The position numbers and the translations under genes are program-made. The notes beneath the pieces were generated by a model. That model saw only the letters and a program-made list of their open reading frames with translations, ran no database searches and was not told the origin of the DNA. A DNA stretch of 64,000 bases, from positions 248,001 to 312,000 of IMG/VR virus record IMGVR_UViG_3300035180_001778; one strand, 5' to 3'. Every line of letters begins with the position of its first letter. Within the stretch, counting starts at the first letter, position 1. Shown here piece after piece: positions 965-54,233 of this stretch.

Positions 965-1525
965 TCAGCCCGAGGCCTGGTTCTGCTGGAACCCCACGAG
1001 GAAGGGTTCCCAGAGGTCCGACTTGACGTCATGCCGGATCTGGGGAGCCCCCAACGGCAGAGTCTTCGGAGCGTGCGGATGCGCGATGCCCTTCCACGTT
1101 GCCGGGGGCTTGAGCCTCATGCCCGCTTCTGCCGGCGTGCGACCAGCCTTGCGGCCGTTGCACGGGTAGCAGCTCGTCACGATGTTCTCCCACACCGTCT
1201 TCCCACCCTGGCGCCTCGGAACCACATGGTCGTAGTTCAGGTCCTTCCGCGACTTGGTGGTGCCGCAGTAGCAGCACATGAAGTTGTCGCGAGCGAAGAC
1301 GTTCTCCCGTGAGAACTTGACGCCCCGCTTGCGATACGGGACGACCTTCTTGAGCATGGCGACCGCGGGCATCTTGACGACCTGCCCATCACGCTCGCAG
1401 AGGACCTCGTCGTACTCTTCCAGGATTTGGATTTTGCCGTTGCAGAAGTCGACCATTGCGACCTGCCACGGCACGACTCTGTGTGGGGCCATCCACGAGT
1501 TCAAGATCAGCGTATGCGAGTTCAT
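965..1525 (-). CDS. HNH endonuclease (McrA-like)
   Basis: FSRENVFARDNFMCCYCG, DHVVPRRQGG, WENIVTSCYPCN. Confidence 0.9.
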   Translation of the reverse strand: MNSHTLILNSWMAPHRVVPWQVAMVDFCNGKIQILEEYDEVLCERDGQVVKMPAVAMLKKVVPYRKRGVKFSRENVFARDNFMCCYCGTTKSRKDLNYDHVVPRRQGGKTVWENIVTSCYPCNGRKAGRTPAEAGMRLKPPATWKGIAHPHAPKTLPLGAPQIRHDVKSDLWEPFLVGFQQNQASG

Positions 1526-1577
1526 GGGACACCTTCGTGATGCGCCCCAACTTGGAGCGGCTACCGTTTCAATTGCA

Positions 1578-1654
1578 TGGTGCCCGCCGGGGGATTCGAA
1601 CCCCCAACCTTCCGTTTTTGAGGCGGACGCCGCTGCCAGTTGGGCTAGACGGGC
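1578..1654 (-). tRNA. tRNA-Leu(CAA), short variable loop
   Basis: Loop CT-CAA-AA, encoded CCA. Confidence 0.85.
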
Positions 1655-1708
1655 ATAATACAGGAAGGCCCTGGTTGCGATCAACCAAGGCCTTCCAATT
1701 CGAGAATT

Positions 1709-2060
1709 TGGAGCTGCCGGGAATCGAACCCGGGTCCGCAAAGCTTCCGTTCCGCTTTCGTTTACGTGCGTAGCCGCCATATCCCTGGCGGCTGGGTTCG
1801 CGGATTTGGCCGCGAACTATCTCGTCTGCTTGTCTCGAAGGGGTAGCCGCCGAGCACGCTTCCCCTTCCAGCCCTGTGGGTTGACACCGGAAATCCAGCT
1901 ACTAGGACGATCTTGCTGGCCGATGGTCACTACGCAGCCATCTGCATGGGGACGAGAGCGTTGTCGTTCGCAGGTATACGTCTCGATTGATTACGGCGGG
2001 TCGAGAGCCGCCTACACGCAAGCTGGAACTTCCAATCCACGTCGAAACCAAGTCAGCCCC
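1709..2060 (-). ncRNA. ssrA: tmRNA
   Basis: 5' GGGGCTGACTTGGTTTCGAC, G3.U70 acceptor, 3' T arm, tag ANDNALVPMQMAA then TAG TGA. Confidence 0.95.
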
Positions 2061-8688: not shown

Positions 8689-8730
8689 ACGTGCTTTTCT
8701 ATTCCATTCTGGGAGCGCGATAAACGCTCC

Positions 8731-8804
8731 GGCATCCCCGGTAGGAGTCGAACCTACCTATCAGGTTTCGTAGACCTGTGCCTCATCCGCTAGGCTATGG
8801 GGAC
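8731..8804 (-). tRNA. tRNA-Arg(ACG)
   Basis: Loop CT-ACG-AA. Confidence 0.9.
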
Positions 8805-8836
8805 ATGTGCCCTCCGAGAAGGAGGGGTTTTCGACC

Positions 8837-9136
8837 CTACTTGGGGTCGAGGACGCTGTTCACGATGCGGAGCCGACCACTGGCCGATCCAACATTGTGA
8901 AGAAGCTCGGAGTTCTCAGGAGTTGTTGCCGGTCCCAAACGAATGGGCTGCAACGACTTCTTGATGTTCGTGAGCCGGATCTTCCAGCGCACATCGAAGT
9001 CTCGACCCTCGGCGAAGTAGCCGATGCTGAGCTTCACCGGGTCGTCATCCCCAAGAACAGGTTTCCCCGTCTCACGGACGTGAGACGGGGAAACCTGAAC
9101 CATCTGCAAGAAATCCTCATACTCATGGAGTGCCAT
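8837..9136 (-). CDS. hypothetical protein
   Basis: ORF in tRNA spacer. Confidence 0.4.
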   Translation of the reverse strand: MALHEYEDFLQMVQVSPSHVRETGKPVLGDDDPVKLSIGYFAEGRDFDVRWKIRLTNIKKSLQPIRLGPATTPENSELLHNVGSASGRLRIVNSVLDPK

Positions 9137-9252
9137 TCTCTAGGCACCCCACAAGAAGATTAAGACCTAGCTGGTAGGGAGGAAAGCCTCGACTCCTACC
9201 CTCTTCCTTCGCGCGTTGTAGAGGCACCGCGCGAAGCACCCAGCTCTGTCAG

Positions 9253-9325
9253 TGTGCCTGACGGGGATCGAACCCGCCTTAGTTGATTCACAGTCAACCA
9301 TCATCACCAGATGACAACAGGCACC
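9253..9325 (-). tRNA. tRNA-His(GTG)
   Basis: GTTGA-CTGTGAA-TCAAC, encoded G-1. Confidence 0.85.
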
Positions 9326-9429
9326 ACGATACTCGGACCAAAAGAGAAGTTCGTACCCTCCTACCCCCAGTCTTGTCGAGGGAACAAGGATAGGAGAGTA
9401 CGAACAGGACCACTGCCAGATGGTATCCT

Positions 9430-9568
9430 TAGAGGGGTATCTTGGAGTCGAACCAAGTACTTGTAAGAACCACTGTTTTGCCCCGTTTTTGACGGGGCGA
9501 GGTGTGGTACTGGGAGCTTTCGCTCCTGCGTGGAAGGCAGGTGAGGAACCGATCCTCTGTAATACCCC
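9430..9568 (-). ncRNA. Y-like RNA 5: tRNA body (TCC loop) with about 65-nt module in the variable arm
   Basis: Full cloverleaf plus ACCAC-ACCTC-stem-GTGGT-TCTTACA module. Confidence 0.75.
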
Positions 9569-9576
9569 GAGATTTA

Positions 9577-9696
9577 AGGCGTCCGAGGTGCGGCCCTGGG
9601 ACTGTGCAAGAGCGAGTTTCGAATTCGCCCCATCGGTGCTAAACCGATTGCCCACCAAGGACAATCTTGCGTGTAAGAGCCGCGAATTGAACGCCT
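9577..9696 (-). ncRNA. Y-like RNA 4: module forms the ends, tRNA domain joined via acceptor stem
   Basis: AGGCGTTC/GGACGCCT and GCGGCTC/GGGCCGC stems, ACCTC and CTTACA motifs, internal D/anticodon/T arms. Confidence 0.7.
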
Positions 9697-9829
9697 AGTG
9701 CCAAACCGTGGAGTCGAACCACGCTTGCTTGTATGAGCCTCAGTTTTCCTCCACATGGGAGGAGAGAAGAGACACAGGGGATTTTGGTTTCCTTATGTGG
9801 GAAGTGGCCGCCCCGCGGCCTTGTTTGGC
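9696..9829 (-). ncRNA. Y-like RNA 3: tRNA body (CAT loop) with module in the variable arm
   Basis: Acceptor GCCAAAC/GTTTGGC; GTCTC-TTCTCTC-stem-GAGGC-TCATACA. Confidence 0.7.
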
Positions 9830-9862
9830 GTTTGCCGGCCCATGCCGGTCTTGAAAGATTTC

Positions 9863-10003
9863 CCCGTTCCCGAGAGAAGAGACCTGGATTTCTGATCGTT
9901 TTTCGGACGATTGCCTTACCGATAGGCTACAGACCCAGTTGTTGGCGGGTTTGGCAAGAGTTGAACTTGCTTGCGTGTAAGGTCTCGTTCGAGAGGGAAC
10001 GAG
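9863..10003 (-). ncRNA. Y-like RNA 2: circularly permuted tRNA (YrlA-type order)
   Basis: Terminal stem, T arm, acceptor 3' strand with GCCA, loop, acceptor 5' strand, D arm, anticodon arm, terminal stem. Confidence 0.8.
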
Positions 10004-10141
10004 TAGTGGGCCACCCTGGAGTCGAACCAGTGACTTGTAAGAACAACTATTTGTCCAGTTCACACGGGACGAGGTGTTGTACTGAGGAGCTTGCGCTCCC
10101 GCTCCGATTGCGGGTGGGGGACCGACCCCCTGTGATGGCAC
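10004..10141 (-). ncRNA. Y-like RNA 1: tRNA body with module in the variable arm
   Basis: Paralog of 9430-9568 with compensatory change ACAAC/GTTGT vs ACCAC/GTGGT. Confidence 0.75.
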
Positions 10142-10226
10142 AGATGACCGTTTGAGACGGTCTCGTTTCGCTTCTATCTAGTACACCATCTCTCCGAGTT
10201 ACGAGATGGTTTTTTCAGATTTCTCT

Positions 10227-10805
10227 CTAGAGGTGCAATGTAGTGCCGTACGGCGCGACGTTGTACCCGATCTTGCGCCCCTTGAGGAAGAACTCCTGGA
10301 CGGCACGAGCGAGATAGGCTGAGGTGAGGGCGATAAACGGCAAGTGCTCGCCGTTTTCGCAGGTTGCTGCCCCAGCTCCGGGCTCATCGTCGATGGTGAA
10401 GTCGTGATCCCACCGAACGAGTCCGAAGGTGCCGTCTGCCGCCAGTCCCCCGTGGATGCAGGGAGTGTTGGTCCGACGAGCGAAAGCTTGCACAAGCCGG
10501 CGTGCTGCCCCGTTGTCGAGGCAGTCGACGATGAGGTCGGCTCCCGAGAGGAGCTGCTTCTCATTGTCGGACGTGAGCTTGTGCGGGATGGTCTCGATCT
10601 TCGTCCCGAAGAAGAAGTTCATCGCCTGCTTCAGCGACTCGACCTTGGCCTTGCCCACGGAAGGCTTCCCGTGGAACTGGCTGAGTACGTTCTTCTGCTC
10701 GACGCGGTCGAAGTCGATCACCTTGAGGTTCACCCCGGTGCTCCGGAGGAACTGTGCAACGTGGGAGCCGAGCGCGCCGACCCCCACAATGGTCACGGTC
10801 TTCAT
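10227..10805 (-). CDS. ThiF/E1-like adenylyltransferase
   Basis: GVGALGS, IDFDRVE, DCLDN..AR, candidate catalytic Cys in ATCE. Confidence 0.9.
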   Translation of the reverse strand: MKTVTIVGVGALGSHVAQFLRSTGVNLKVIDFDRVEQKNVLSQFHGKPSVGKAKVESLKQAMNFFFGTKIETIPHKLTSDNEKQLLSGADLIVDCLDNGAARRLVQAFARRTNTPCIHGGLAADGTFGLVRWDHDFTIDDEPGAGAATCENGEHLPFIALTSAYLARAVQEFFLKGRKIGYNVAPYGTTLHL

Positions 10806-11185
10806 AGTGTTGCTCCGAAGCCGATCCAGTCCCCAAACAACCCCTGCTCGCGGACTGTGCGGACGGTTTCTGCGAACTTGAGCCACGCCTCCCAGGGCAT
10901 GTCCCTCCGCATATAGTTACACCTGATGCAGGCCGGAACGACGTTCGCCTTCGTGTGACCAAGAGCGTTATCCACGCGATCCAGGGTCATCTTGAGCTTG
11001 GTCTCGCCGCAGTACTGGCACCCCAAAGCGAGGAGGTCTTGGACGAAAGAGAGATCGAGATCCGAGATGAACCCGTGCCTCTTGTCCCTCTTCTTGGAGT
11101 CCTCCAAGACCCAACGGGAGCGTGTTGTGGGGTCTCTCCGAAGAGCTTTCCGGCGATCTTCCCGGACGCGCCAGTTATCAGGCAT
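10802..11185 (-). CDS. HNH endonuclease inserted in the operon
   Basis: CQYCG, LDRVDNALGHTKANVVPACIRCN. Confidence 0.85.
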   Translation of the reverse strand: MPDNWRVREDRRKALRRDPTTRSRWVLEDSKKRDKRHGFISDLDLSFVQDLLALGCQYCGETKLKMTLDRVDNALGHTKANVVPACIRCNYMRRDMPWEAWLKFAETVRTVREQGLFGDWIGFGATL

Positions 11186-11224
11186 GATCCGTGGAGGTTA
11201 CCACAGATCCGCCCCTGCTGACAA

Positions 11225-11515
11225 TCACTTCGTCAGCGGTCGCTGAGACCAGATAACAACAACGGCAACCGTCTTCTGGAAGGGCTTGCCATCAGCATCG
11301 AGATCAGATTCCTGCCCCACATGCACGAGCTTTCCACTGTGCGTGGTCAGATAGTGGTTGACGTGATCCTGCCACTGATTTGGCCCGGTGAAGCGATAGT
11401 GGTTGACGTGATCCTGCCACTGATTTGGCCCGGTGAAGCTGAAGTCCCACCCACATGTACAGCTTCCGCCGAGCACGTCGCTGTCGATACGAACGACTTC
11501 CTGAATCTTACCCAT
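11225..11515 (-). CDS. hypothetical protein with in-frame 15-aa duplication
   Basis: ORF; FTGPNQWQDHVNHY occurs twice. Confidence 0.55.
   Translation of the reverse strand: MGKIQEVVRIDSDVLGGSCTCGWDFSFTGPNQWQDHVNHYRFTGPNQWQDHVNHYLTTHSGKLVHVGQESDLDADGKPFQKTVAVVVIWSQRPLTK
11350..11439. repeat. perfect 45-bp tandem duplication
   Basis: gatagtggttg...gtgaagc x2. Confidence 0.95.
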
Positions 11516-11522
11516 GGCTGCC

Positions 11523-11789
11523 TCAGTCGACGTCTCCGAAGGGGGTCTTCGGCCGGACGCTGATCCGGTTGTGGAGGTCCCCCGTGGCCGGGAAGCGGTC
11601 GATGACGAAGTCGGTGAAGTCGGCGTTCCCCATCGCGGGGATCCCGGGGACGCCGCCGTTGCGGATGGCCTCGGTCACCCAGGCGCGAATCTGGGTGTCG
11701 GTCGAGTCGTACAGGACCGTATCCGGGAGGTCCCCCTGGTTGCCGGAGTAGGTGATGTTGACTCGGGCCTCTTGTGCTGCGATGACCAT
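11523..11789 (-). CDS. ubiquitin-like protein (putative)
   Basis: 88 aa, beta-grasp-compatible pattern, ends RPKTPFG-DVD, between JAB and ThiF, AGGAG RBS. Confidence 0.65.
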   Translation of the reverse strand: MVIAAQEARVNITYSGNQGDLPDTVLYDSTDTQIRAWVTEAIRNGGVPGIPAMGNADFTDFVIDRFPATGDLHNRISVRPKTPFGDVD

Positions 11790-11836
11790 GGCTGGTCTCC
11801 TTTCATTCGATGTTGGGGGTCTAGTACACCGGACCC

Positions 11837-12244
11837 TCAAGACGGGGTTGGAAACCCGGAGCGAATCCTCAGCTCACGGACCCAAGGGATCAGAGGAACC
11901 TCTGAGAGCAGGTCCACACAGGCCAAGCTCACAGTGTATCTGGGGGCTTGGTGCTCCTTTTCCCGGAGACACAAGACCAGCGAATCCCCCGAAGAGATCC
12001 ACCATTCGAGATGCCGACCCAATCCACGTTCAATCGCGTCGAACGTGGTGATATCCTCACGGCTCGGACCCAGCTTCCCGTATCCGGGGTGGGTGTGAGC
12101 TATGCCCCGGAGCCGAGCGCGGTTCTCCCAGATCACATCCCAGAGGGGACGGCTATCCGGGATAGCTCCGCCAGAACGGTCGTTCGGCATGTGCCAGTAG
12201 AAGGGTTGACCGTCGAGGTCAAGGAGAACGGCTGCTTCCTTCAT
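11837..12244 (-). CDS. JAB/MPN metalloprotease
   Basis: N-terminal Glu and HTHP-x6-S-x2-D (HxH..S..D) motif. Confidence 0.9.
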   Translation of the reverse strand: MKEAAVLLDLDGQPFYWHMPNDRSGGAIPDSRPLWDVIWENRARLRGIAHTHPGYGKLGPSREDITTFDAIERGLGRHLEWWISSGDSLVLCLREKEHQAPRYTVSLACVDLLSEVPLIPWVRELRIRSGFPTPS

Positions 12245-12246
12245 GG

Positions 12247-12432
12247 TCAACCCTTGCAGGACTTCTTGTGCTTGTACCAGACGAAGGCCGCGTCGCCGAT
12301 CCCGGCTTGCGCTGCCCACTGCTTGAGCGACAGGCCTTGAGGGAGACCTTCAGCTCGCCAGCGACGCTTCAGATCGTTGCGCCACTTGCGACACACACCG
12401 TTCTCGTATCCCTCTTGGCTAGTCGTCGTCAT
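12247..12432 (-). CDS. small basic hypothetical protein
   Basis: Fills operon gap; start uncertain. Confidence 0.4.
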   Translation of the reverse strand: MTTTSQEGYENGVCRKWRNDLKRRWRAEGLPQGLSLKQWAAQAGIGDAAFVWYKHKKSCKG

Positions 12433-13390
12433 CATCGTCGTCCCTATCGTCCCCAACGTGTCGGAAGACCACGAGCTTCCGCTCACGGTCCGCTTGTCCG
12501 ATTACACCAGGCAGCGATTCGAGGGTGAAGTATGCATCGCCTTTCTCCCCCGTTGCATGGTCGTTGAGGCAAATCCCGGAATCGATGATCCGAAGCGTAC
12601 GGGCATCGCACGTACACTCGAACTGCCGGTGCATGAACCGGAAGGTGACGACCATTTCTCCGCGAGACGTGGATGTTCTGTGGTCGAGGTAGGTCGCACC
12701 ACCTACCGCCAGGGAGGCCCGAGCAGCCTCGCCGAAGTCCACCACAGCCATTGCCCGCCGACCGGCTGCATCTCCGAGCTGAGTACGAATCTGCTCTCGG
12801 CGTTCCTCAAGCTGACGTCGTTCTTCTTCCTCGCGGAGCTGCTTGGCGATCTCTTCGCGGCGCTTTTGGGCTTCGAGTGTCCGCCACATTTCCATGCGGA
12901 AGGCAGCATCGAGAGCCGGAGCCACACCCTTCACCGCATCGAGTGAAGGGGTGCGGTTGTAGTAAGCCTGGAGAACGTCTCCCTCGGGACCGAGGGGCAT
13001 CTCTTGTCCCCCGTAGATGAGGGGCCCATCTTCGTAGAAGGCTCCGACCTGGACACGGGCGAACCGATCCAGGCCGGGCTCCACAAGATGTACGGGCTTT
13101 GCGTAGTCGCAGATCCTCGCCGGGTCCGGGTCGACACGGACATTGTCCGGAACGATCCAGTCTCCGACGAGATACCCGCGAACCTGTTGTCGAAGGAGCC
13201 CAGCGGTGGCTTCCGCCGGGCCTTTGAGCTTGGCCTTCCGTCCAGTCAAACCGAACGTGTACCACCCATGCTCCCTCGGAAGAGGGCCATCGAGAGTCCA
13301 CGATCGTTCAGCTTGACGAAGGACCCTACCCCCGATCCAAGGAAGGACGATCGTCTCGTCCTTCCCCTGGAGAAGATCCTTCCAGCCCAT
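12419..13390 (-). CDS. coiled-coil protein with C-terminal E2-like domain (putative)
   Basis: IIDSGICL...TLESLPGVI resembles the UBC active-site region; operon context. Confidence 0.5.
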   Translation of the reverse strand: MGWKDLLQGKDETIVLPWIGGRVLRQAERSWTLDGPLPREHGWYTFGLTGRKAKLKGPAEATAGLLRQQVRGYLVGDWIVPDNVRVDPDPARICDYAKPVHLVEPGLDRFARVQVGAFYEDGPLIYGGQEMPLGPEGDVLQAYYNRTPSLDAVKGVAPALDAAFRMEMWRTLEAQKRREEIAKQLREEEERRQLEERREQIRTQLGDAAGRRAMAVVDFGEAARASLAVGGATYLDHRTSTSRGEMVVTFRFMHRQFECTCDARTLRIIDSGICLNDHATGEKGDAYFTLESLPGVIGQADRERKLVVFRHVGDDRDDDDDDD

Positions 13391-13395
13391 TCAGC

Positions 13396-15285
13396 TCACG
13401 CAGCCCATGCCGGCTTCACCAAGAGCGGGGTCTTGATGATGGTGTCGACGAGGGTCACACGAGGAGCAGCGTTCACGACACCCGCCGTCTTGCCGACCGG
13501 AGTCGACGCCACGAGGGCCGCGAGCATCCGAGGAATCGCGTAGGGATCCGCGAATACCTTCGGGTCGATATCGAAGCAGGGGATACCCAGCCGAACGGCC
13601 GTATCCCTGACGATGCTGCCGTTGTCCTTCACCTTGACGAGGCCGAATGCCGACGGGTTGCCGATGTAGCGAACCATCGGTTCGAAGGTGCCATGCTCCC
13701 CCTCGTCTCCGACGAAGATGAAGAGAGCATCCTCACCCGGCTTGGGCTTGTGAGCCGAGAGGCTCATGATGCCCGCCGAGTGAGAGGTTCCACCTCCCGC
13801 CATGATGCCGCGGAAGGCGTTCGTCACTCCAGCCGCCGAAGCGTGCTGGATCTTGATCTCGCGACCCGCGGTGTTGAAGACCGCGACGTGCAGGCGATCC
13901 AGGGGGAATGCCTGGAGGAACTTCGCGAGGAGGTCCTTGGCAGCCTCGATCGCGCCCTCCATCGAGCCCGAGATGTCCACGAAGACGTAGATGCGCTGGT
14001 CCTTGAGGGACACTTCCACCGCCTTCTGCAAGGCGACGTCAGCGACCTGAACCAGGGCTTCCTTGACCTCCCGGGACTTCACCCGGGTGGCGATGTTGGC
14101 GGCCCGCATGTCGAGAGCACCCTTGCCGGCCCGCTCCCACCGCTCGCGGATGTCCTGTACATTGAGAAGACCGAGGTCTTCCAGCGTCGGAGTCGCGATG
14201 ATGAGGTCCTTGTCGGACATGGCGCCCGCTTCGATGGCCGAAGCGACGATGGCCCTCGTGAGGCCGACCGAGCTGGGGACCATCCCGACGATGCGCTTCC
14301 AGTTCTGCTTCTCCTTCGAGATGCGCTGGCAGATGGTCGCCTCGTCGAGGCCCTCCCACGAATCCGCCGCCTTGACCTCCAGGCCGATGGCCACCGTGCG
14401 ACGGCCATCCTTTGCCTGAGCCTGCTTCCAGCGGAGGAGCTGGAAGAACTGGGGCGTCACCGGCTTGTAGCCGGTGAACTTGACGAGCTTCGCGACGGTC
14501 GTCTTGAAGCCGTTGGAGATGAGGCCCGCGAAGACCTTCGGGTTCTCCTCACGGTAGCGGAGCCACTTGGTGACCACCGACGTCCACCGACCGAGGAACG
14601 GCCGGCGAGCCGACTTGCCGAAGCCCAGCTCGCGGTTGATGTCCGCGATGCCCGGGACCGTCAGGAGCGTGTGTATACGGACGAGCTGCTTCGCATCGAG
14701 GTCAGGCTTGTCCTTCACACCCTTCACCGGCTTGGTCGAGATGAGCATCATCGCCTCGCCGATGTCCCTGAAGTCGTCGTCGAAGAAGGCGACCTTCCCC
14801 GCGTCGAGGACCGGGTCTCCCTTGCGGGACTGGACGAGCATGAAGGCCGCCATGACGACCTTGAAGTCACGGTGACCCTGCGTGAACGCGTAGGATGCCC
14901 AGTGGGCCGCGAACTCGTTGTCGAGCTTCCAGACCTCGGCGACCTGTCGGTACAGGTAGACCGCGACCTCGGGGAAGATCCCCGGTGCCCGATACTCGCC
15001 GACGATCCGGCCCGCTGCGTCCTTGACCTGGTTGGTATCGGTCATGACCCCGAGCAGGGTCCGCACGTTCTTGGTGCCGTTCTTGGAGAGCGCGTAGACG
15101 TTCTTGACCGTCTGATCGCTGTCCTTGACCTTCTCGACCTTGTGGGTGACGAAGACCCACTTGACGCCGAGCGGCGAGGAGGGGTCCTTCGAGACCATGC
15201 CAGGGCGACCGTGAAAGACGTGATCGACGAATGCGAGGCTGGCCGCGATGATTCGCTCTGCCGGGCCGAGGTTGCTTTGTTCCAC
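13396..15285 (-). CDS. TROVE/Ro60-like helical protein with C-terminal vWA domain
   Basis: MIDAS VDISGSM, GGGTS, VGDEGE; long helical N-terminus with LDNEFAAHWASYA; start uncertain (up to 15348). Confidence 0.7.
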   Translation of the reverse strand: MEQSNLGPAERIIAASLAFVDHVFHGRPGMVSKDPSSPLGVKWVFVTHKVEKVKDSDQTVKNVYALSKNGTKNVRTLLGVMTDTNQVKDAAGRIVGEYRAPGIFPEVAVYLYRQVAEVWKLDNEFAAHWASYAFTQGHRDFKVVMAAFMLVQSRKGDPVLDAGKVAFFDDDFRDIGEAMMLISTKPVKGVKDKPDLDAKQLVRIHTLLTVPGIADINRELGFGKSARRPFLGRWTSVVTKWLRYREENPKVFAGLISNGFKTTVAKLVKFTGYKPVTPQFFQLLRWKQAQAKDGRRTVAIGLEVKAADSWEGLDEATICQRISKEKQNWKRIVGMVPSSVGLTRAIVASAIEAGAMSDKDLIIATPTLEDLGLLNVQDIRERWERAGKGALDMRAANIATRVKSREVKEALVQVADVALQKAVEVSLKDQRIYVFVDISGSMEGAIEAAKDLLAKFLQAFPLDRLHVAVFNTAGREIKIQHASAAGVTNAFRGIMAGGGTSHSAGIMSLSAHKPKPGEDALFIFVGDEGEHGTFEPMVRYIGNPSAFGLVKVKDNGSIVRDTAVRLGIPCFDIDPKVFADPYAIPRMLAALVASTPVGKTAGVVNAAPRVTLVDTIIKTPLLVKPAWAA

Positions 15286-15417
15286 AGCGATTCCATCCCA
15301 GCTCTCGCAGAAGAGCTGCATTGTGCGTGTGCAGTGCCGAAGGAACACGAGGAGTCCCCGAGCTTCTGCGAGCTGGAGACTCCGTGTGCTGGAAGGGCGT
15401 GCCTTCCTTGTCCTTCT

Positions 15418-18974: not shown

Positions 18975-19595
18975 TTATAGCAAGCCCTTCTTCTTCAGGT
19001 TCTCGTACCGCCTTCGGGTGTTCTCAACGAATTCCGCTTGTGTCTGAGCCCTCTTCTCCCTGTTACAAGACGTGCAACATGAGACACAGTTGTCTGACAC
19101 GTACCCCTTCAGGTTGTCCACCCGATCGATCCCATTGCGTTTCAACCCCAGCATTCCGATCCCTTGCGGAGTCTGATGGGGCGAACGTCCACAATAGAAG
19201 CATTCGGAGGTCACCAACTGAATGTACTCATCCAGGTTCAACCTCCAAATAAGGGAGGGGTGCTCAGAATGGGGCTTCCCTGGTGCTGCCTGAAATTGGT
19301 TGGAGCCCAGTTTCCCTGTGACCTTTCGATTTGTGCGGTATCCCAGTTTACGTACGTAAAAAGACATATCCGCAAGCCAAGGTTCCCGTTCGGTTTTGAG
19401 GGCCCTGTTAGAAGCTGCAAGCTTCTCCTTGTGCAGACATCCACACGAGGTCGTGTTTTCAGTGCGTAAGTTTGTGCCCGAGTAGAACCTAACCGTCCCA
19501 CATGTACACAAGCACTCCCACATACACGGCTTCGTTGCCTTGCGAAGCACCTGCAAACGACCGAAAGTCTGGCCCGTGATGTCAATCAACTTCAT
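18975..19595 (-). CDS. HNH homing endonuclease
   Basis: DITGQTFGRL, CFYCG, GIDRVDNLKGYVSDNCVSCCTSCN. Confidence 0.85.
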   Translation of the reverse strand: MKLIDITGQTFGRLQVLRKATKPCMWECLCTCGTVRFYSGTNLRTENTTSCGCLHKEKLAASNRALKTEREPWLADMSFYVRKLGYRTNRKVTGKLGSNQFQAAPGKPHSEHPSLIWRLNLDEYIQLVTSECFYCGRSPHQTPQGIGMLGLKRNGIDRVDNLKGYVSDNCVSCCTSCNREKRAQTQAEFVENTRRRYENLKKKGLL

Positions 19596-19714
19596 AACTT
19601 GTACGACATATAAGGCGAATAATACCGTACAAGCGATGCTATCCAGGGGACCCTTCCTGATCCCGGGCCTCCGGCAGAAGAAGATCGAGCAGAACTTCAC
19701 CTGGTGACCCTCGC

Positions 19715-20068
19715 ATGCTGAAACTCTTCCACGAGACACCCTCTTCCAACGTTTCTCAGATGAGAGCCGACGGATTCTTCAAATCCAACATCTATTCCGC
19801 CAGATGGTACACATTTACCGAAAGCTTCGAGGGGGCCCTTCGCTACACAGGGGGGGACCACGATCGGGTAGTCCTGGAATTCCAGTTGCCTCCCGCTGCG
19901 GTGAAAGAGTTTCTGTGGAAGTACCCCGGCACCACAGACTTCTACGGTCGCGCCTGGGCTCTACGGAAGCCCCTGCCCATCGAATACCTCAAGAAGGTGC
20001 ATCCGGTCCCGAAGGACTTCGAGATGCCCGACCATGGGGAGCCACTACTTTCCTACGATCGACGTTGA
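19715..20068 (+). CDS. ADP-ribosyltransferase-fold protein (Tpt1/DUF952-like, putative)
   Basis: LFHET...GF...YTFT...ALRY...VVLEF...LPIEYL pattern. Confidence 0.5.
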   Translation: MLKLFHETPSSNVSQMRADGFFKSNIYSARWYTFTESFEGALRYTGGDHDRVVLEFQLPPAAVKEFLWKYPGTTDFYGRAWALRKPLPIEYLKKVHPVPKDFEMPDHGEPLLSYDRR

Positions 20069-29719: not shown

Positions 29720-30166
29720 TCAGAAATCGTCGTCCCAGATCACCTCAAACGAGGTCCGGCGGAGGACAGGTACGCGAGAGAATTTGAGAGCTTCTGCCCA
29801 CACCTCTCTCAACCTCTGTGCTGCCTTGGGGTACAGCTCTTCAGCATGATGATCAATGCCCAACCAACTCGAAGATGGGGCTACTCGCCGTAGCAGATCC
29901 AAGTTGGTGCCAATTCGGCACATATACACATTTCCCCATGGCTTCTTCGCAGCCTTGCTTTCAATACGGCGAAGATACATCCCTGTCGTGCCACCGAGTA
30001 TCTTTGCATATTGTGCAGAATGCCCGAAAAGCTGCACGGATACACCCTGTGTCACCATAGACACGGCTTCCACAAGCATGCGCGTCGTACGCCCTGAACC
30101 AGGTCGCGTTTGAACCTCGGGCCAAGGGCGGATCCCCAGAGCAATGCGGACTTCTTCAGGAGTCAC
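29720..30166 (-). CDS. hypothetical protein with C-terminal tag
   Basis: P-loop-like GSGRTT; ends RRTSFEVIWDDDF. Confidence 0.55.
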   Translation of the reverse strand: MTPEEVRIALGIRPWPEVQTRPGSGRTTRMLVEAVSMVTQGVSVQLFGHSAQYAKILGGTTGMYLRRIESKAAKKPWGNVYMCRIGTNLDLLRRVAPSSSWLGIDHHAEELYPKAAQRLREVWAEALKFSRVPVLRRTSFEVIWDDDF

Positions 30167-46108: not shown

Positions 46109-46645
46109 TTACCCACCCGGTTGGAAGCAGCGGAGACATCGAGGCTCGTACGCCTCAGCACCACCGACGAGGACCGTTGCCTCACTCTGGATGAGGCGAT
46201 AAGAGCGACATGCGGAATTTCCGCAGACCGCACAGCGGGATCGCAACTTTCGAACCTCATCCGCGTGAGCCATGAATGTAGGGAGATGTCCGAAAGGCAC
46301 CCCCTTCCAGGTCAGGTCGAGCCCTGCAAGGACTACGGAAACCCCTGATAGGATCACATTCAGGACAGCCGGGACTGCTTCGGCAGAGAGAAACTGGGCT
46401 TCGTCGATAGCTATGATGTCGGCACTTGTGGGTAGAGGGAAGGCATCAGGGGAGAGCCAATTCGCGTGGCACCGGATCCCCTCGTGCGAAATCACCTCGG
46501 CCTCAGCATGCCGGGTATCTGTGATCGGCTTGTAGACTTCGACGCTCTTGCCCAGTTTTTCCATCTGGTGAACCACAGCAAGAAGCGCCGTGGTCTTCCC
46601 AGCGAACATGGGGCCCGCGATTACAGTAAGTCGGCCGATTCTCAT
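46109..46645 (-). CDS. tdk: thymidine kinase
   Basis: GPMFAGKTT, IDEAQF, AGLD, CAVC, YEPRCLRC. Confidence 0.95.
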   Translation of the reverse strand: MRIGRLTVIAGPMFAGKTTALLAVVHQMEKLGKSVEVYKPITDTRHAEAEVISHEGIRCHANWLSPDAFPLPTSADIIAIDEAQFLSAEAVPAVLNVILSGVSVVLAGLDLTWKGVPFGHLPTFMAHADEVRKLRSRCAVCGNSACRSYRLIQSEATVLVGGAEAYEPRCLRCFQPGG

Positions 46646-46682
46646 CTGCCGAAGACGGGTCACAAAAGGAAACCACGGAAAT

Positions 46683-46895
46683 CTACTCAAGATCGTCGAG
46701 GAGATGCTCCCAGCCGGTCGGTCTCTTGTCCGCCAGCTCTTGGAGCATCCCGATCTGGAATTCTTTCGCTTCTTCCTTCGTGATGTTTCCACTGGCGTAC
46801 TCGTACTCGACGCAGGGACACGAGCGGAACATGATCCGCCCGTTGCAAACGGGGCAGCGGACGGGAGGGCAATTCTTCCGTCCGTCTCGCATCAT
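46683..46895 (-). CDS. small zinc-binding protein with C-terminal tag
   Basis: CPVC..CPC; ends PTGWEHLLDDLE. Confidence 0.55.
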   Translation of the reverse strand: MMRDGRKNCPPVRCPVCNGRIMFRSCPCVEYEYASGNITKEEAKEFQIGMLQELADKRPTGWEHLLDDLE

Positions 46896-48046
46896 AGCTG
46901 CTCCCACACCGTGAGGGCGGGCCGCGGAGCTGCCGCCCACGAAGGGGCCATGGACTCCTCGATGAGCTGCACACAGACCTCTTCCAGGCCCGCACGGTCC
47001 GGTTGCTGCGGGAGGAGGCTGGTCCTCATCAGCTCCGACAGCTCCGCATCCTGAGCCACAGCCCACGACACGAGTTCGTCGTAGGTCCACATCCCAGCTC
47101 GGATCTCCAGAAGCTCAGCAGCATCCGGCTTACGAACGAGTACGCCTTTTCCTGACAGGATTTCACGGCACATCCGGAGAAGCCTGACCAAGTGCATGGC
47201 GTGTTTGGTGTCGTACCCAAACTTCTCTTCCAGAGCGGCCCTTGCCGGGTTCCGGTTCTTCTTCCACTCCTGGTACTGAGACCAGGTCCGATGGGCCGCC
47301 GTGTACCTCCGCTCCTTGTCGAGCAGCTCGATGAAGTTCGTGTCGTACCCGACACTTCGAGCAGCCGCTTGCCAGGTGTTCACTTCGACGTCATCCCAGG
47401 ACCACTTGGTGACCTCCAAGAGACGCTCGGTGAACAGCTCCCGCATGCGGATCCGGGCCGGCTCGTCGAACTCCTCCATGTCCCGCCACCGCCAAGAATC
47501 GAGGACCTTGGTGATGGCAGAGGTTGCCGCTGCGAGCTGGTCGGCGGGGATGACCGTTCGCTCGGGAAGCCCGAACTCGGATCGCAAGGGCTGAGCCTTC
47601 GGGGGATCCTTGAGCCACTTGTAGTGTATGTTGATCCTCTTGAGCTGAGCGGTCGCGTACCCTGAGAACGTGTGTTTGGCCTTCCGCGAGAGGAAGCTGT
47701 CACGCTTCTCCCGGATGCGCTCCCACTCGGGGCTCAGGACCAGGTGATCGCTCGGGTCCGTGTAGAGCAGCTCCAAAACGTTGGGGTTGCAGTCGCACGC
47801 GAGGAGGAAGAACTTCCGGATGTCGAAGATCGTGAAATCCGGCTCGTGTTGCTCCGCTTGCTCGAAACGGTTGTGGGGCTGGAAGCCGAGGTAGTTCACC
47901 TTCGGGGCAATGCAGACCCCACGCAAGTCCAGGTCACTCGTCGGCAAGTTGGTGCCGTAGGCCTGGCTCCCGTGCCGAGTGATGAACAGGGTCCGCTGAG
48001 GAAGCCAGCCGAGGTTGCCCTTGTAGATGTTCCAGTCGAAGCTCAT
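46892..48046 (-). CDS. Pol-beta superfamily nucleotidyltransferase (RlaP/YcgL-like)
   Basis: GSQAYG..SDLDLRG, NPNVLE, YDTKHAMHLVRLL. Confidence 0.88.
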   Translation of the reverse strand: MSFDWNIYKGNLGWLPQRTLFITRHGSQAYGTNLPTSDLDLRGVCIAPKVNYLGFQPHNRFEQAEQHEPDFTIFDIRKFFLLACDCNPNVLELLYTDPSDHLVLSPEWERIREKRDSFLSRKAKHTFSGYATAQLKRINIHYKWLKDPPKAQPLRSEFGLPERTVIPADQLAAATSAITKVLDSWRWRDMEEFDEPARIRMRELFTERLLEVTKWSWDDVEVNTWQAAARSVGYDTNFIELLDKERRYTAAHRTWSQYQEWKKNRNPARAALEEKFGYDTKHAMHLVRLLRMCREILSGKGVLVRKPDAAELLEIRAGMWTYDELVSWAVAQDAELSELMRTSLLPQQPDRAGLEEVCVQLIEESMAPSWAAAPRPALTVWEQL

Positions 48047-48065
48047 CCCCCATTTACACCAAGAG

Positions 48066-48764
48066 CTAGAAGCTCTCGTCGAGGTATTCCCACCACGACT
48101 TACGAGGAAGCTGGGGGCCCGAACAAGGGATCCACTTCTCATGGAGATCGCGGCCTTGAATGGTGATCCCTCGTCTGCTCGTGACCCACATGTTCCAATG
48201 TCGAACGATGGCCCGAGTCCCCTCCCAAACGGAAGCTACTTGAGCGTAGATCCGCTCCCTGTTCTTGTCCCGGCGGAAAGCCCACACCCCAGGCTTGCAC
48301 CACTCGGGGATAGGGAGAGGCGGCTTCGGGACATGAATGAGAGGATGCCCACCCTCACGAACGAAGGAGATGTCGCGGAAGTTGATCTCGTCGTCGTAGT
48401 AGACCGCGTGCTCGGTTCGGCCTCGAATACGCAGTTCGGATCCCACACTTGTAGCAAGCTCACGGGAAAAGATCGGGAGCGCCCCATTGGGCAACTGCTC
48501 AACCTGGAAGATGCGTCGAGCAATCCCCTGATAGTCACGCGCTCGGAAGATGGGCGCGGCCATCGATCTGGCTAGGCTACTTCGCCCCTCTGCCGAGTTC
48601 ATGAAGTTGGAGATGATGCTCTCTCGAAGGGACTGATGTAGTTGGGTTCCCACCGCAACAGCGCTGTCCGAGAGCATCCGGAATGGGACTGTGCATCCCA
48701 TCGAGAGACTTCGAGCCGCTGTCTCGAAGTCCATAGCTATCAGCGACACAATTCCCGGAGGCAT
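48066..48764 (-). CDS. hypothetical protein with capsid-like segment and C-terminal tag
   Basis: GRSSLARSM..RDYQGIARRIFQVEQLPNGALP; start uncertain. Confidence 0.5.
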   Translation of the reverse strand: MPPGIVSLIAMDFETAARSLSMGCTVPFRMLSDSAVAVGTQLHQSLRESIISNFMNSAEGRSSLARSMAAPIFRARDYQGIARRIFQVEQLPNGALPIFSRELATSVGSELRIRGRTEHAVYYDDEINFRDISFVREGGHPLIHVPKPPLPIPEWCKPGVWAFRRDKNRERIYAQVASVWEGTRAIVRHWNMWVTSRRGITIQGRDLHEKWIPCSGPQLPRKSWWEYLDESF

Positions 48765-54160: not shown

Positions 54161-54233
54161 GCTCCCGTAGCTCAATTGGCTGAGCAGCGGATTTCAAATC
54201 TGTTGTATAGGGGTTCGAGTCCCCTCGGGAGCA
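54161..54233 (+). tRNA. opal suppressor tRNA (anticodon TCA)
   Basis: GCGGA-TTTCAAA-TCTGT, 7-bp acceptor, short variable loop, own promoter 54122-54149. Confidence 0.85.

What the first reader, a model, noticed from the sequence alone, without database searches (positions are those of the whole stretch)
9430..10141. Five tandem tRNA-mimic RNAs carry one conserved module in three topologies
All five share stem / pyrimidine-rich internal loop (ACCTC or TTCTCTC) / stem, followed by TTACA (CATACA in one). In three (9430-9568, 9696-9829, 10004-10141) the module sits in the variable arm of a normal tRNA. In 9863-10003 the RNA is opened in the module and the tRNA is circularly permuted with an internal GCCA (YrlA order). 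In 9577-9696 it is opened in the module and the tRNA hangs by its acceptor stem. Compensatory change ACCAC/GTGGT vs ACAAC/GTTGT supports the fold. The anticodon loops all differ, and the canonical Ro-binding bulged helix is not evident. These may be intermediates between tRNA and Y RNA.
Basis: partly seen in the sequence, partly recalled or inferred. Interest (0 to 1): 0.9.

Follow-up and report, generated by a model that had tools for sequence, protein, structure and literature searches.

The report
Phage tRNA-shaped RNAs with shared handle
Five neighbouring genes in a giant phage encode tRNA-shaped RNAs that all carry one conserved extra "handle", wired in three ways; the family recurs in many related phages beside a distant relative of the RNA-binding protein Ro60, so these are probably a new kind of Y-RNA-like tRNA mimic.

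Summary
On the minus strand of 9430-10141 lie five structured RNAs. Units A, C and E are cloverleaves with a ~65-nt insert at the variable-arm position. Unit D is a circularly permuted cloverleaf whose ends lie in the insert. Unit B is a tRNA body held by its acceptor end between the two halves of the insert.

All five share one module: C(C)AG, stem 1, NNCUC/A-rich internal loop, stem 2, tail YACAMGCAA. Covariance models found more than 50 further copies of the three forms in related jumbo-phage contigs. 94-96% of modelled pairs form, and compensatory changes occur in 29-35 of 34-37 pairs.

The RNAs sit directly downstream of a conserved cassette: a 650-aa divergent Ro60/TROVE+vWA-like protein (hhalign 92%, E 7.5e-7; best Foldseek hits are Ro60), an unknown 323-aa protein, a JAB-like protein, a small protein ending in Gly, and a ThiF/E1-like protein.

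The best reading is Y-RNA-like tRNA mimics, with the module as protein handle. They are not members of Rfam YrlA: the score is low, the 5' motif is absent, and an anticodon arm is present. Expression, RNA ends, protein binding and charging are untested. I rate this a new variant of a known kind.

The parts
10004..10141 (-). Unit E, closed form: cloverleaf with the module at the variable-arm position. Module 10043-10080, tail 10032-10042, trailer A-CUA 10004-10007. Anticodon loop AAUCGGA.
   Evidence: Fold; coordinates; R1 156.7 bits. Belongs to the 'NNU[UC]GGA loop, discriminator A' class seen in 7 phages.
9863..10003 (-). Unit D, permuted form. The 5' and 3' ends pair as stem 2 (9995-10003 with 9863-9871). 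Stem 1 is 9980-9986 with 9879-9885. The acceptor is closed by G-CCA-ACAACU (9937-9946).
   Evidence: Fold z = -4.6; Rfam tRNA 27.5 bits with the T arm missing, YrlA 19 bits; R2 homologues and covariation.
9696..9829 (-). Unit C, closed form. Module 9737-9773 (loop UUCUCU), tail UCAUACAAGCAAG 9724-9736, trailer A-CUA. Anticodon loop CACAUAA.
   Evidence: R1 57.1 bits, E 4e-13. The model was built from A and E only.
9577..9696 (-). Unit B, acceptor-clamped form. Terminal stem 2 is 9689-9696 with 9577-9584. Stem 1 is 9677-9683 with 9590-9596. Tail UUACAC runs into acceptor-like helix GCAAGA/UCUUGC enclosing D, anticodon (UUUAGCA) and T arms (9606-9670).
   Evidence: Fold z = -3.65; R3 homologues and covariation; coordinates.
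9430..9568 (-). Unit A, closed form. Module 9469-9508, tail 9458-9468, trailer U-CUA. Canonical-looking anticodon loop CUUCCAC (UCC) and discriminator U.
   Evidence: Fold z = -5.6; R1 168.8 bits. The UCC-loop class is conserved in 4 phages. Called tRNA-Gly once the insert is removed in silico.
13396..15348 (-). 650-aa divergent Ro60/TROVE-like protein: N-terminal beta domain, helical repeats, C-terminal vWA with DxSGSM MIDAS motif. First gene of the conserved cassette.
   Evidence: Pfam finds only weak vWA. AF2 model. The top 7 Foldseek PDB hits are all Ro60/TROVE, E 1e-7 to 3e-6. About 69 of 100 ESM neighbours are TROVE. hhalign A20 vs A19 gives Prob 91.8%, E 7.5e-7, 312 columns.
12419..13390 (-). 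Conserved 323-aa protein of unknown function, second cassette gene.
   Evidence: Present next to the Ro-like gene in 9 of 9 distinct loci. No Pfam, PHROG, NCBIfam, PADLOC, PDB or Atlas assignment.
11837..12319 (-). JAB/JAMM-like protein (weak), third cassette gene.
   Evidence: Pfam Prok-JAB E 0.0076; conserved in 9 of 9 loci.
11523..11840 (-). Small conserved protein (about 85-aa core) ending ...RPKTPFG plus 1-3 residues. Candidate ubiquitin-like protein.
   Evidence: Conserved in 9 of 9 loci; C-terminal comparison. The ubiquitin-like assignment is inference from the C-terminal Gly and the E1/JAB neighbours.
10227..10886 (-). ThiF/E1-like adenylyltransferase, last cassette gene. The RNA cluster starts 85 nt downstream.
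   Evidence: Pfam ThiF 6.7e-28; NCBIfam and PADLOC E1 models; conserved in 9 of 9 loci, with RNAs immediately downstream in most.
9253..9324 (-). Ordinary tRNA-His(GUG) following the cluster. It shows the cluster is embedded in the phage's tRNA array.
   Evidence: Rfam tRNA 50.8 bits.

Best explanation
The five units are members of a conserved, previously undescribed family of tRNA-derived non-coding RNAs. The family occurs in a clade of jumbo phages whose contigs are mostly binned with Myxococcota.

Each RNA combines an L-shaped tRNA body with one conserved 'handle'. The body has T loop GGUUCGAnUCC and D loop GG. The handle reads C(C)AG, stem 1, internal loop NNCUC opposite an A/C-rich strand, stem 2 closed by a G-C pair, and tail YACAMGCAA. 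Selection keeps body plus handle, whatever the strand connectivity: hairpin at the variable-arm position (A, C, E), terminal helix of a permuted body (D), or terminal helix clamping the acceptor end (B).

The RNAs lie just downstream of a cassette headed by a divergent Ro60/TROVE+vWA protein. I therefore propose they act like Y RNAs. The handle would dock the Ro-like protein, and the tRNA body would engage tRNA-binding factors or tRNA-directed enzymes and nucleases, as in YrlA-type Ro RNPs.

They are probably cut out of one transcript by the host tRNA-end processing enzymes, because most open-form units begin right after the trailer of a closed unit.

Shown here: the folds, their conservation, the shared module, the linkage to the cassette, and the Ro-like homology. 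Inferred: transcription, processing, which protein binds the handle, and the cellular role.
For: Structure:
- Closed form: 28 sequences, 94.2% of pair cells form, 34 of 36 pairs have two-sided changes, slid controls reach at most 52%.
- Permuted form: 16 sequences, 96.0% paired, 35 of 37 pairs.
- Clamped form: 12 sequences, 96.0% paired, 29 of 34 pairs.
- The same single-stranded motifs occur in all three forms.

Non-decoding features:
- The permuted form's acceptor is capped by UUCG or GAAA tetraloops in at least 4 of 16.
- The clamped form has an invariant GCAA/UUGC acceptor base with eight different anticodons.
- Many closed units lack U33 or have 6- or 8-nt anticodon loops, and one has no anticodon arm.

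Linkage:
- The cassette Ro-like / 323 aa / JAB / small protein / ThiF is present in 9 of 9 distinct loci, with the RNAs downstream.
- In an RNA-first scan, cassette genes occur in 16 of 22 RNA-positive loci against 2 of 58 RNA-negative loci.

Ro-likeness: Foldseek, ESM Atlas, hhalign Prob 91.8%, E 7.5e-7.

Precedent: YrlA RNAs are permuted tRNA mimics encoded within 4 kb of Ro60 on the same strand, including in phages with tRNA arrays (PMC4201824). A phage Ro60 binds phage-encoded stem/internal-loop/stem RNAs (PMC12135203).

Processing: 20 of 28 open units start 0-4 nt after a closed unit's trailer (coordinates).
Against: - There are no expression data. The only 'RNA' run is probably DNA.
- There is no binding evidence, and the handle could equally be read by the E1/JAB/small-protein/323-aa products.
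- The YrlA Ro-binding motif GNCGAAN0-1G is absent, and the Rfam YrlA score is 19 bits.
- The Ro-like assignment is remote. There is no Pfam TROVE hit. The helical domain alone gives no significant structural match. Full-length TM-scores are only 0.20-0.27.
- Anticodon loops are conserved within at least two orthologous classes. The UCC class keeps U73, C35 and C36 like tRNA-Gly, which a pure protein tether would not need.
- With the insert removed in silico, 20 of 28 closed units are called tRNAs.
Confidence: 0.5

Rival explanations
1. The closed and acceptor-clamped forms are working tRNAs that carry an expansion segment, or a leader-trailer clamp. They would be charged and used in translation, perhaps as versions that host anticodon or acceptor nucleases cannot recognise. 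The handle would be a stability, protection or delivery element.
For: - 20 of 28 closed units are called tRNAs once the insert is deleted in silico.
- The UCC class keeps loop YUUCCAC and discriminator U in four phages while its stems covary.
- ARAGORN calls a tRNA inside 5 of 6 B-type units, always with U33.
- The trailers (NCCA, NCUA, NCCG) look like ordinary phage tRNA gene ends.
Against: - The permuted form cannot be charged where a tetraloop caps the acceptor, yet it keeps the same handle.
- B-type acceptor bases are constant regardless of anticodon, for example A3-U70 with an Ala anticodon.
- Many loops lack U33 or have the wrong size.
- The anticodons in the window duplicate those of ordinary tRNAs in the same array: Gly-UCC, Leu-UAG, Met-CAU, Phe-GAA.
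Confidence: 0.2
2. The handle is a processing signal cut by a double-strand or structure-specific nuclease: RNase III-like as in T7 hairpin sites, or a splicing-type cut followed by ligation. The insert would then be removed from the closed forms, permuted forms would be circularised and reopened at the acceptor, and clamped forms would release a tRNA.
For: - The three contexts (inside a tRNA, at the ends of a permuted tRNA, in a leader-trailer helix) are those in which archaeal and algal splicing motifs occur (own knowledge).
- Some permuted units have a spacer with NCCA or a hairpin between the acceptor strands, like an intergenic tRNA junction.
- The window encodes an RlaP-type RNA-repair nucleotidyltransferase.
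Against: - The two loops face each other instead of forming a 3-nt/4-bp/3-nt bulge-helix-bulge.
- No intron family was found by Rfam.
- No splicing endonuclease or RtcB was found among the ORFs scanned.
- The conserved flanks (CAG, YACAMGCAA) and the extra hairpin lie outside what would be removed.
- Acceptor tetraloops would block maturation.
Confidence: 0.12
3. The RNAs work with the other cassette proteins rather than with the Ro-like protein. They could be substrates or scaffolds of the E1-like / Gly-ended small protein / JAB set, for example in thiolation-type chemistry on tRNA-like RNAs. Alternatively they are free decoys that soak up host tRNA-cleaving defence nucleases.
For: - The RNAs start directly after the ThiF-like gene in most loci.
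- E1/ubiquitin-like sulfur relays modify tRNA in other systems (own knowledge: Urm1/Uba4, TtuB/TtuC).
- Diverse, class-conserved anticodon loops fit decoys for anticodon nucleases.
Against: - No thiouridine synthetase-type (PP-loop) domain was found in the cassette.
- The small protein's ubiquitin-like fold is inferred only from its C-terminus.
- Nothing links the handle to these proteins specifically.
Confidence: 0.15

Closest known systems
YrlA / bacterial Y RNAs bound by Ro60 (Rsr); Rfam RF02553; Chen et al. 2014, PMC4201824
   Same: - tRNA-mimicking domain with T arm, closed acceptor-like stem and D arm in permuted order (unit D).
- The 5' and 3' ends pair in a stem / internal-loop / stem element.
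- Encoded a few kb from a Ro60-type gene, on the same strand and often in several copies.
- Also found in phages with tRNA arrays. Bxz1 is an example: Ro gp220 with a YrlA-like RNA 190 nt upstream.
   Different: - A full anticodon arm is retained.
- The terminal helix leaves from the variable-arm position, not as the anticodon stem.
- There is no GNCGAAN0-1G motif. A different conserved motif set is used: NNCUC, YACAMGCAA.
- Unpermuted (closed) and acceptor-clamped forms coexist with the permuted one.
- The partner protein is only remotely Ro-like and sits in a cassette with E1/JAB genes.
- The Rfam score is 19 bits, against 32.5 bits for the Bxz1 RNA.
Type II tRNAs (Leu, Ser, Tyr, Sec) with long variable arms
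   Same: An extra helix emerges between the anticodon and T arms of an otherwise standard cloverleaf (units A, C, E).
   Different: The insert is about 60-70 nt, against at most about 20 nt (own knowledge). It is bipartite, with a conserved internal loop and tail. It is not detected by ARAGORN or Rfam. The same element also occurs as a terminal helix.
Circularly permuted tRNA-like genes: two-piece tmRNA of some bacteria, and permuted tRNA genes of Cyanidioschyzon merolae / split tRNAs of Nanoarchaeum (own knowledge)
   Same: The 3' half is encoded before the 5' half, and a helix formed by the transcript ends holds the two halves together.
   Different: Those RNAs are matured by cleavage (tmRNA) or by bulge-helix-bulge splicing. 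Here no such motif is present. The acceptor is often capped by a tetraloop. Permuted and unpermuted versions with the same handle sit side by side.
Thermus phage phiLo Ro60 with Yrl1/Yrl2 (PMC12135203)
   Same: A phage-encoded Ro60 and phage-encoded small RNAs nearby, with a 5'-3' stem flanking an internal loop. Proposed hijacking of host RNA enzymes.
   Different: The phiLo RNAs were picked by a CGAA motif and have no complete tRNA body. Here the invariant core is CUCG, and CGAA occurs only in some open-form units.

Membership tests
YrlA (Rfam RF02553) | Score at or above the Rfam gathering score (69 bits) | tested here: not met
   Only unit D matches: 19 bits, E 0.6, model positions 31-81. 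Caveat: the YrlA-like RNA beside Bxz1 Ro also fails, with 32.5 bits and E 2.3e-4. The cut-off is strict.
YrlA / bacterial Y RNA | Encoded within about 4 kb of a Ro60/TROVE gene on the same strand (PMC4201824) | tested here: inconclusive
   The cluster lies 3.3-5.9 kb downstream of the 650-aa gene on the same strand, and this is conserved in 9 of 9 loci. The protein is only remotely Ro-like: hhalign Prob 91.8% and Foldseek, but no Pfam TROVE hit.
YrlA / bacterial Y RNA | GNCGAAN0-1G motif near the 5' end (putative Ro-binding site) | tested here: not met
   Found in 0 of 28 closed, 0 of 12 clamped, and 3 of 16 permuted units, in the last case at unrelated internal positions.
YrlA / bacterial Y RNA | tRNA-like domain in the order T arm, closed acceptor-like stem, D arm, with the terminal stem in place of the anticodon stem | tested here: not met
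   The order is met in the D type only. All forms keep a separate anticodon arm, and the terminal helix leaves at the variable-arm position.
YrlA / bacterial Y RNA | Physically bound by Ro60 | not testable with these tools
   Needs RIP or EMSA.
tRNA (RF00005) | Detected by tRNA models | tested here: not met
   ARAGORN and Rfam at gathering score call none of the five. Unit D scores 27.5 bits, below the 29-bit cut-off. After in silico removal of the insert, 20 of 28 closed units are called.
tRNA (RF00005) | 7-nt anticodon loop with U33 and purine 37 | tested here: inconclusive
   Met in A (CUUCCAC). B has U33 but C37. Not met in E (AAUCGGA), C (CACAUAA) or D (CCGAAAA). B-type homologues always have U33.
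tRNA (RF00005) | Free acceptor end that can carry CCA, and aminoacylation | not testable with these tools
   Closed forms end N-CUA, N-CCA or N-CCG. In the permuted form the acceptor is closed, by tetraloops in at least 4 of 16. Charging needs experiments.
Bulge-helix-bulge introns / permuted tRNA genes | Two 3-nt bulges on opposite strands separated by a 4-bp helix at the junctions | tested here: not met
   The two loops (5 nt and 4-8 nt) lie directly opposite each other, between stems of 5-9 bp.
Group I / group II introns in tRNA genes | Ribozyme core recognised by Rfam | tested here: not met
   No intron family matches, even at E up to 10, in 9100-10400. The insert is only about 65 nt.
Ro60 / TROVE proteins (the 650-aa neighbour) | TROVE helical-repeat domain followed by a vWA domain with MIDAS motif | tested here: inconclusive
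   For: the architecture; the top 7 PDB fold hits are Ro60; the ESM neighbours; hhalign 312 columns, E 7.5e-7. Against: no Pfam TROVE hit in this protein or in 20 distant relatives; the helical domain alone is not significant.

The most novel reading that the evidence does not exclude
The phage keeps a graded series of one RNA design: a chargeable-looking tRNA with a handle, a tRNA clamped by the handle, and a fully closed permuted mimic. All would serve one Ro-like ribonucleoprotein that is genetically coupled to a ubiquitin-like conjugation set (E1-like, JAB-like, Gly-ended small protein). If so, this would be a living tRNA-to-Y-RNA series. It would also be the first link between a Ro-type RNP, and possibly real 'armoured' tRNAs, and ubiquitin-like chemistry in a virus.
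Probability: 0.15. Interest if true: 0.9.

Novelty: new variant of a known kind. Interest (0 to 1): 0.7.

Why it matters
Y RNAs and their Ro partners are widespread, but their origin and their RNA-recognition rules are poorly understood. YrlA was proposed to derive from tRNA.

This family offers dozens of natural, covarying examples in which the same protein-sized handle is joined to a tRNA body in three connectivities, inside one genome. That makes two questions directly testable: what the handle binds, and whether tRNA shape, rather than chargeability, is what matters.

It also flags a large, unannotated RNA class in jumbo-phage tRNA arrays that standard tRNA and Rfam scans miss. One copy sits unannotated in GenBank record KX853510.1. 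In addition, it exposes a conserved cassette coupling a Ro-like protein with E1/JAB-type genes.

Tried and rejected
- blastn of 9200-10300 against 50,697 phage records: no match.
- PDB sequence searches with the 650-aa protein and its alignment: only weak vWA hits.
- Pfam, PHROG, NCBIfam and PADLOC on the cassette: only ThiF/E1, weak JAB, weak vWA.
- The 323-aa protein stayed unassigned.
- AF2 model of the helical domain alone against the PDB: no significant hit. Ro60 had the best TM-score at 0.28, with E 0.37.
- hhalign with narrow alignments was weak. Only the broadened alignment gave 92%.
- 20 distant relatives of the helical domain carry no Pfam TROVE hit.
- MAFFT alignment of permuted units was out of register. 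I therefore built single-sequence models and let Infernal align.
- Public runs: the only 'RNA' run is probably DNA and holds only fragments of relatives, so there is no information on transcripts or ends.
- Promoter and terminator scan of 8700-11000: nothing above shuffles.
- Comparison of mimic bodies with the phage's own tRNAs: no close parent.
- Reading TGA, TAG or TAA through to test recoding: uninformative at this G+C content. TGA is the commonest stop of long ORFs.
- R1 found no closed unit in 47 kb of Virus Rctr197k, but R3 found a clamped unit there.
Full report
**Context.** The window is part of a ~350-kb jumbo-phage contig. Loci L002 and L005 are identical to it (IMG/VR UViG 3300035180_001778), and the DNA occurs in sediment and microbial-mat metagenomes. 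It carries 37 tRNA genes and a tmRNA on the minus strand. The finding lies inside this array, so the RNAs must be read on the minus strand. ARAGORN and Rfam at gathering thresholds call nothing in 9430-10141. An ordinary tRNA-His follows at 9253-9324.

**The observation.**
- A (9568->9430), C (9829->9696) and E (10141->10004) have a 7-bp acceptor stem, D arm, anticodon arm, T arm (GGUUCGACUCC) and a ~65-nt insert between the anticodon and T arms.
- D (10003->9863) starts and ends inside the insert. Its order is T arm, acceptor 3' strand, G-CCA-ACAACU, acceptor 5' strand, D arm, anticodon arm.
- B (9696->9577) also starts and ends inside the insert. It encloses a tRNA-like body in normal order, attached through its acceptor helix.
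- Four of the five fold much better than shuffles (z -3.4 to -5.6). E gives z = -1.6.
- The shared element is C(C)AG, stem 1, NNCUC, stem 2, an A-rich 3' loop strand, stem 1', YACAMG.
- The A-versus-E compensatory change in stem 1 is real.

**Is it more than chance, and is it conserved?** The neighbouring 650-aa protein retrieved 13 jumbo-phage loci. A covariance model built only from A and E (R1) found unit C at E 4e-13. It also found 25 further full-length closed units in nine other phages, including one with 35% G+C.
- On this alignment 94.2% of pair cells form. 34 of 36 pairs show two-sided changes. The covariation score is 0.81 against 0.20 in shuffles. Sliding the partners by 1-3 columns drops pairing to 39-52%. 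Both insert stems covary.
- Single-sequence models of D (R2) and B (R3) found 16 permuted and 12 clamped units. These give 96.0% pairing each, with 35 of 37 and 29 of 34 pairs showing two-sided changes, including the terminal helices formed by the 5' and 3' ends.
- These alignments are fitted to the models, which favours the structure. The slid controls and the diversity of pair types still argue strongly for real folds.
- Extracting the module from all three alignments shows the same single-stranded motifs throughout.

**Features that bear on function.**
1. In the permuted form the acceptor is closed. UUCG or GAAA tetraloops cap it in at least 4 of 16. An internal NCCA occurs in about 4 of 16. 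A longer spacer with a hairpin occurs in 2 of 16. This looks like a fossil of the junction between two tandem closed units. It shows that a free CCA end is not required.
2. In the clamped form ARAGORN calls a canonical tRNA inside 5 of 6 first-found units (Leu-UAA twice, Val-UAC, Pro-UGG, Arg-UCG), and U33 is always present. Yet the first four acceptor pairs are an almost invariant GCAA/UUGC whatever the anticodon. GCAA is the end of the conserved tail motif, which is single-stranded in the other two forms.
3. Closed units have varied anticodon loops, many without U33 or with 6 or 8 nt, and one unit lacks the arm. Two orthologous classes nevertheless keep their loop while the stems covary. One class has YUUCCAC with discriminator U (window A plus three phages). 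The other has NNU[UC]GGA with discriminator A (window E plus six).
4. With the insert deleted in silico, ARAGORN of 28 closed units as tRNAs, against 0 of 28 with the insert.
5. 20 of 28 open-form units begin 0-4 nt after the N-C-N-N trailer of a closed unit (E->D and C->B in the window). This suggests that tRNA-end processing defines their 5' ends.
6. The bodies are no closer to the phage's own tRNAs than unrelated tRNAs are to each other.

**Neighbourhood.** All nine distinct loci share the gene order 650-aa protein, 323-aa protein, JAB-like, small protein, ThiF/E1-like. The RNA cluster usually lies directly downstream.
- The small protein ends in ...RPKTPFG followed by 1-3 residues. With the E1-like and JAB-like neighbours, this suggests a ubiquitin-like protein that is trimmed and adenylated (inference).
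- To avoid circularity I scanned IMG/VR with an RNA-only pattern. Of 80 loci returned, 22 contained true closed units. 16 of these 22 carried cassette genes within the few kb available, against 2 of 58 RNA-negative loci. Both exceptions look like family contigs.
- The GenBank record KX853510.1 (Virus Rctr197k) has the cassette and an unannotated clamped unit right after an annotated tRNA-Met.
- In the species-genome collection the protein occurs almost only on contigs of MAGs binned as Myxococcota. Closed units are present on five of these.

**Is the 650-aa protein Ro-like?**
- Pfam sees only a weak C-terminal vWA domain.
- The AF2 model (pLDDT 73) shows a beta domain, helical repeats and a vWA domain.
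- Its seven best PDB matches are all Ro60/TROVE structures, aligned over 534-607 columns at E 1e-7 to 3e-6. The TM-scores are only 0.20-0.27.
- About 69 of the 100 nearest ESM-Atlas clusters carry TROVE.
- The helical domain modelled alone gave no significant hit, and narrow profiles were weak.
- A broadened family alignment (A20, Neff 4.1) was compared with an alignment of 22 bona fide TROVE+vWA_Ro60 proteins seeded with Bxz1 gp220. It gave hhalign probability 91.8%, E 7.5e-7, over 312 collinear columns. These cover the second half of the TROVE helices plus the vWA domain.
- I take the protein as a divergent Ro60-type protein, with about 80-85% confidence.

**Comparison with known families.** YrlA RNAs are permuted tRNA mimics encoded within 4 kb of Ro60 on the same strand, including in mycobacteriophages (PMC4201824). 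A phage Ro60 binds nearby stem/internal-loop/stem RNAs (PMC12135203). Unit D shares the order T arm, closed acceptor, D arm, and the terminal helix.
- Membership fails on tested criteria. The Rfam YrlA score is 19 bits with E 0.6. As a control, the Bxz1 YrlA-like RNA scores 32.5 bits and also misses the cut-off.
- The GNCGAAN0-1G motif is absent.
- All forms keep an anticodon arm, and the terminal helix leaves at the variable-arm position.
- The internal loop is not a bulge-helix-bulge, and no intron family matches.

**Verdict.** The most likely explanation (about 0.5) is a new family of Y-RNA-like tRNA mimics, whose conserved handle docks the cassette's Ro-like protein and whose tRNA body engages tRNA-directed factors. 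Rivals are working tRNAs with an expansion segment (0.2), other cassette proteins or decoy roles (0.15), and a processing or splicing signal (0.12). No expression, end-mapping, binding or charging data could be obtained.

Noticed in passing
window 10227-13390 (-), with the 650-aa gene at 13396-15348: Conserved cassette of a ThiF/E1-like protein, a small protein ending ...PFG plus 1-3 residues, a JAB-like protein and an unknown 323-aa protein, always next to the Ro-like vWA gene. It looks like a ubiquitin-like activation and trimming set coupled to a Ro-type protein. I know of no description of this combination.
   Followed up: partly
window 54161-54233 (+): Lone 73-nt tRNA with anticodon UCA on the opposite strand from the array. 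ARAGORN labels it SeC and Rfam tRNA scores it 64.7 bits. It is too short for a real tRNA-Sec, so it may be an opal suppressor. A crude read-through test was uninformative, and TGA is the commonest stop of long ORFs.
   Followed up: partly
GenBank KX853510.1 175217-175341 (-) = L133 25217-25341: Unannotated clamped-form unit (R3 40.9 bits, E 4.5e-9) directly after annotated tRNA-Met Rctr197k_218. The Ro-like gene there is annotated only as a misc_feature, and the 323-aa gene is not annotated.
   Followed up: partly
loci L134-L149 (genome contigs): Relatives of the 650-aa protein in species genomes lie almost only on contigs of MAGs binned as Myxococcota (Kofleriaceae, Polyangiaceae, Sandaracinaceae). 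These include contigs of 276 kb, 544 kb and 1.03 Mb. This hints at the host clade, or at phage contigs mis-binned into those MAGs.
   Followed up: no
window 46892-48142 (-): Protein with an RlaP domain (RNA-repair-pathway Pol-beta-type nucleotidyltransferase, Pfam 2e-21), next to a thymidine kinase at 46109-46792. This points to an RNA-repair theme elsewhere in the genome.
   Followed up: no
window 965-1780, 10802-11185, 18975-19739 (-): HNH/EndoVII-type endonuclease genes are interspersed in the tRNA array. One lies between the ThiF-like gene and the rest of the cassette. They are not conserved in position between phages, so they are probably mobile.
   Followed up: no
L003 15822-15963, 16308-16433, 16941-17080: All three open-form units of this phage keep an A-A mismatch at the same place in the terminal stem (CGCGACC/GGACGCG). 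The two permuted units also keep a U-U mismatch in stem 1. These may be recognition features.
   Followed up: no
L150 (AY129337) 29979-30055: The YrlA-like RNA 190 nt upstream of Bxz1 Ro gp220 scores only 32.5 bits against Rfam YrlA (gathering score 69). Rfam's cut-off therefore misses documented phage Y RNAs.
   Followed up: yes
window 1708-2060 (-): Phage-encoded tmRNA (Rfam 121.6 bits) with tag peptide ANDNALVPMQMAA, inside the tRNA array.
   Followed up: no
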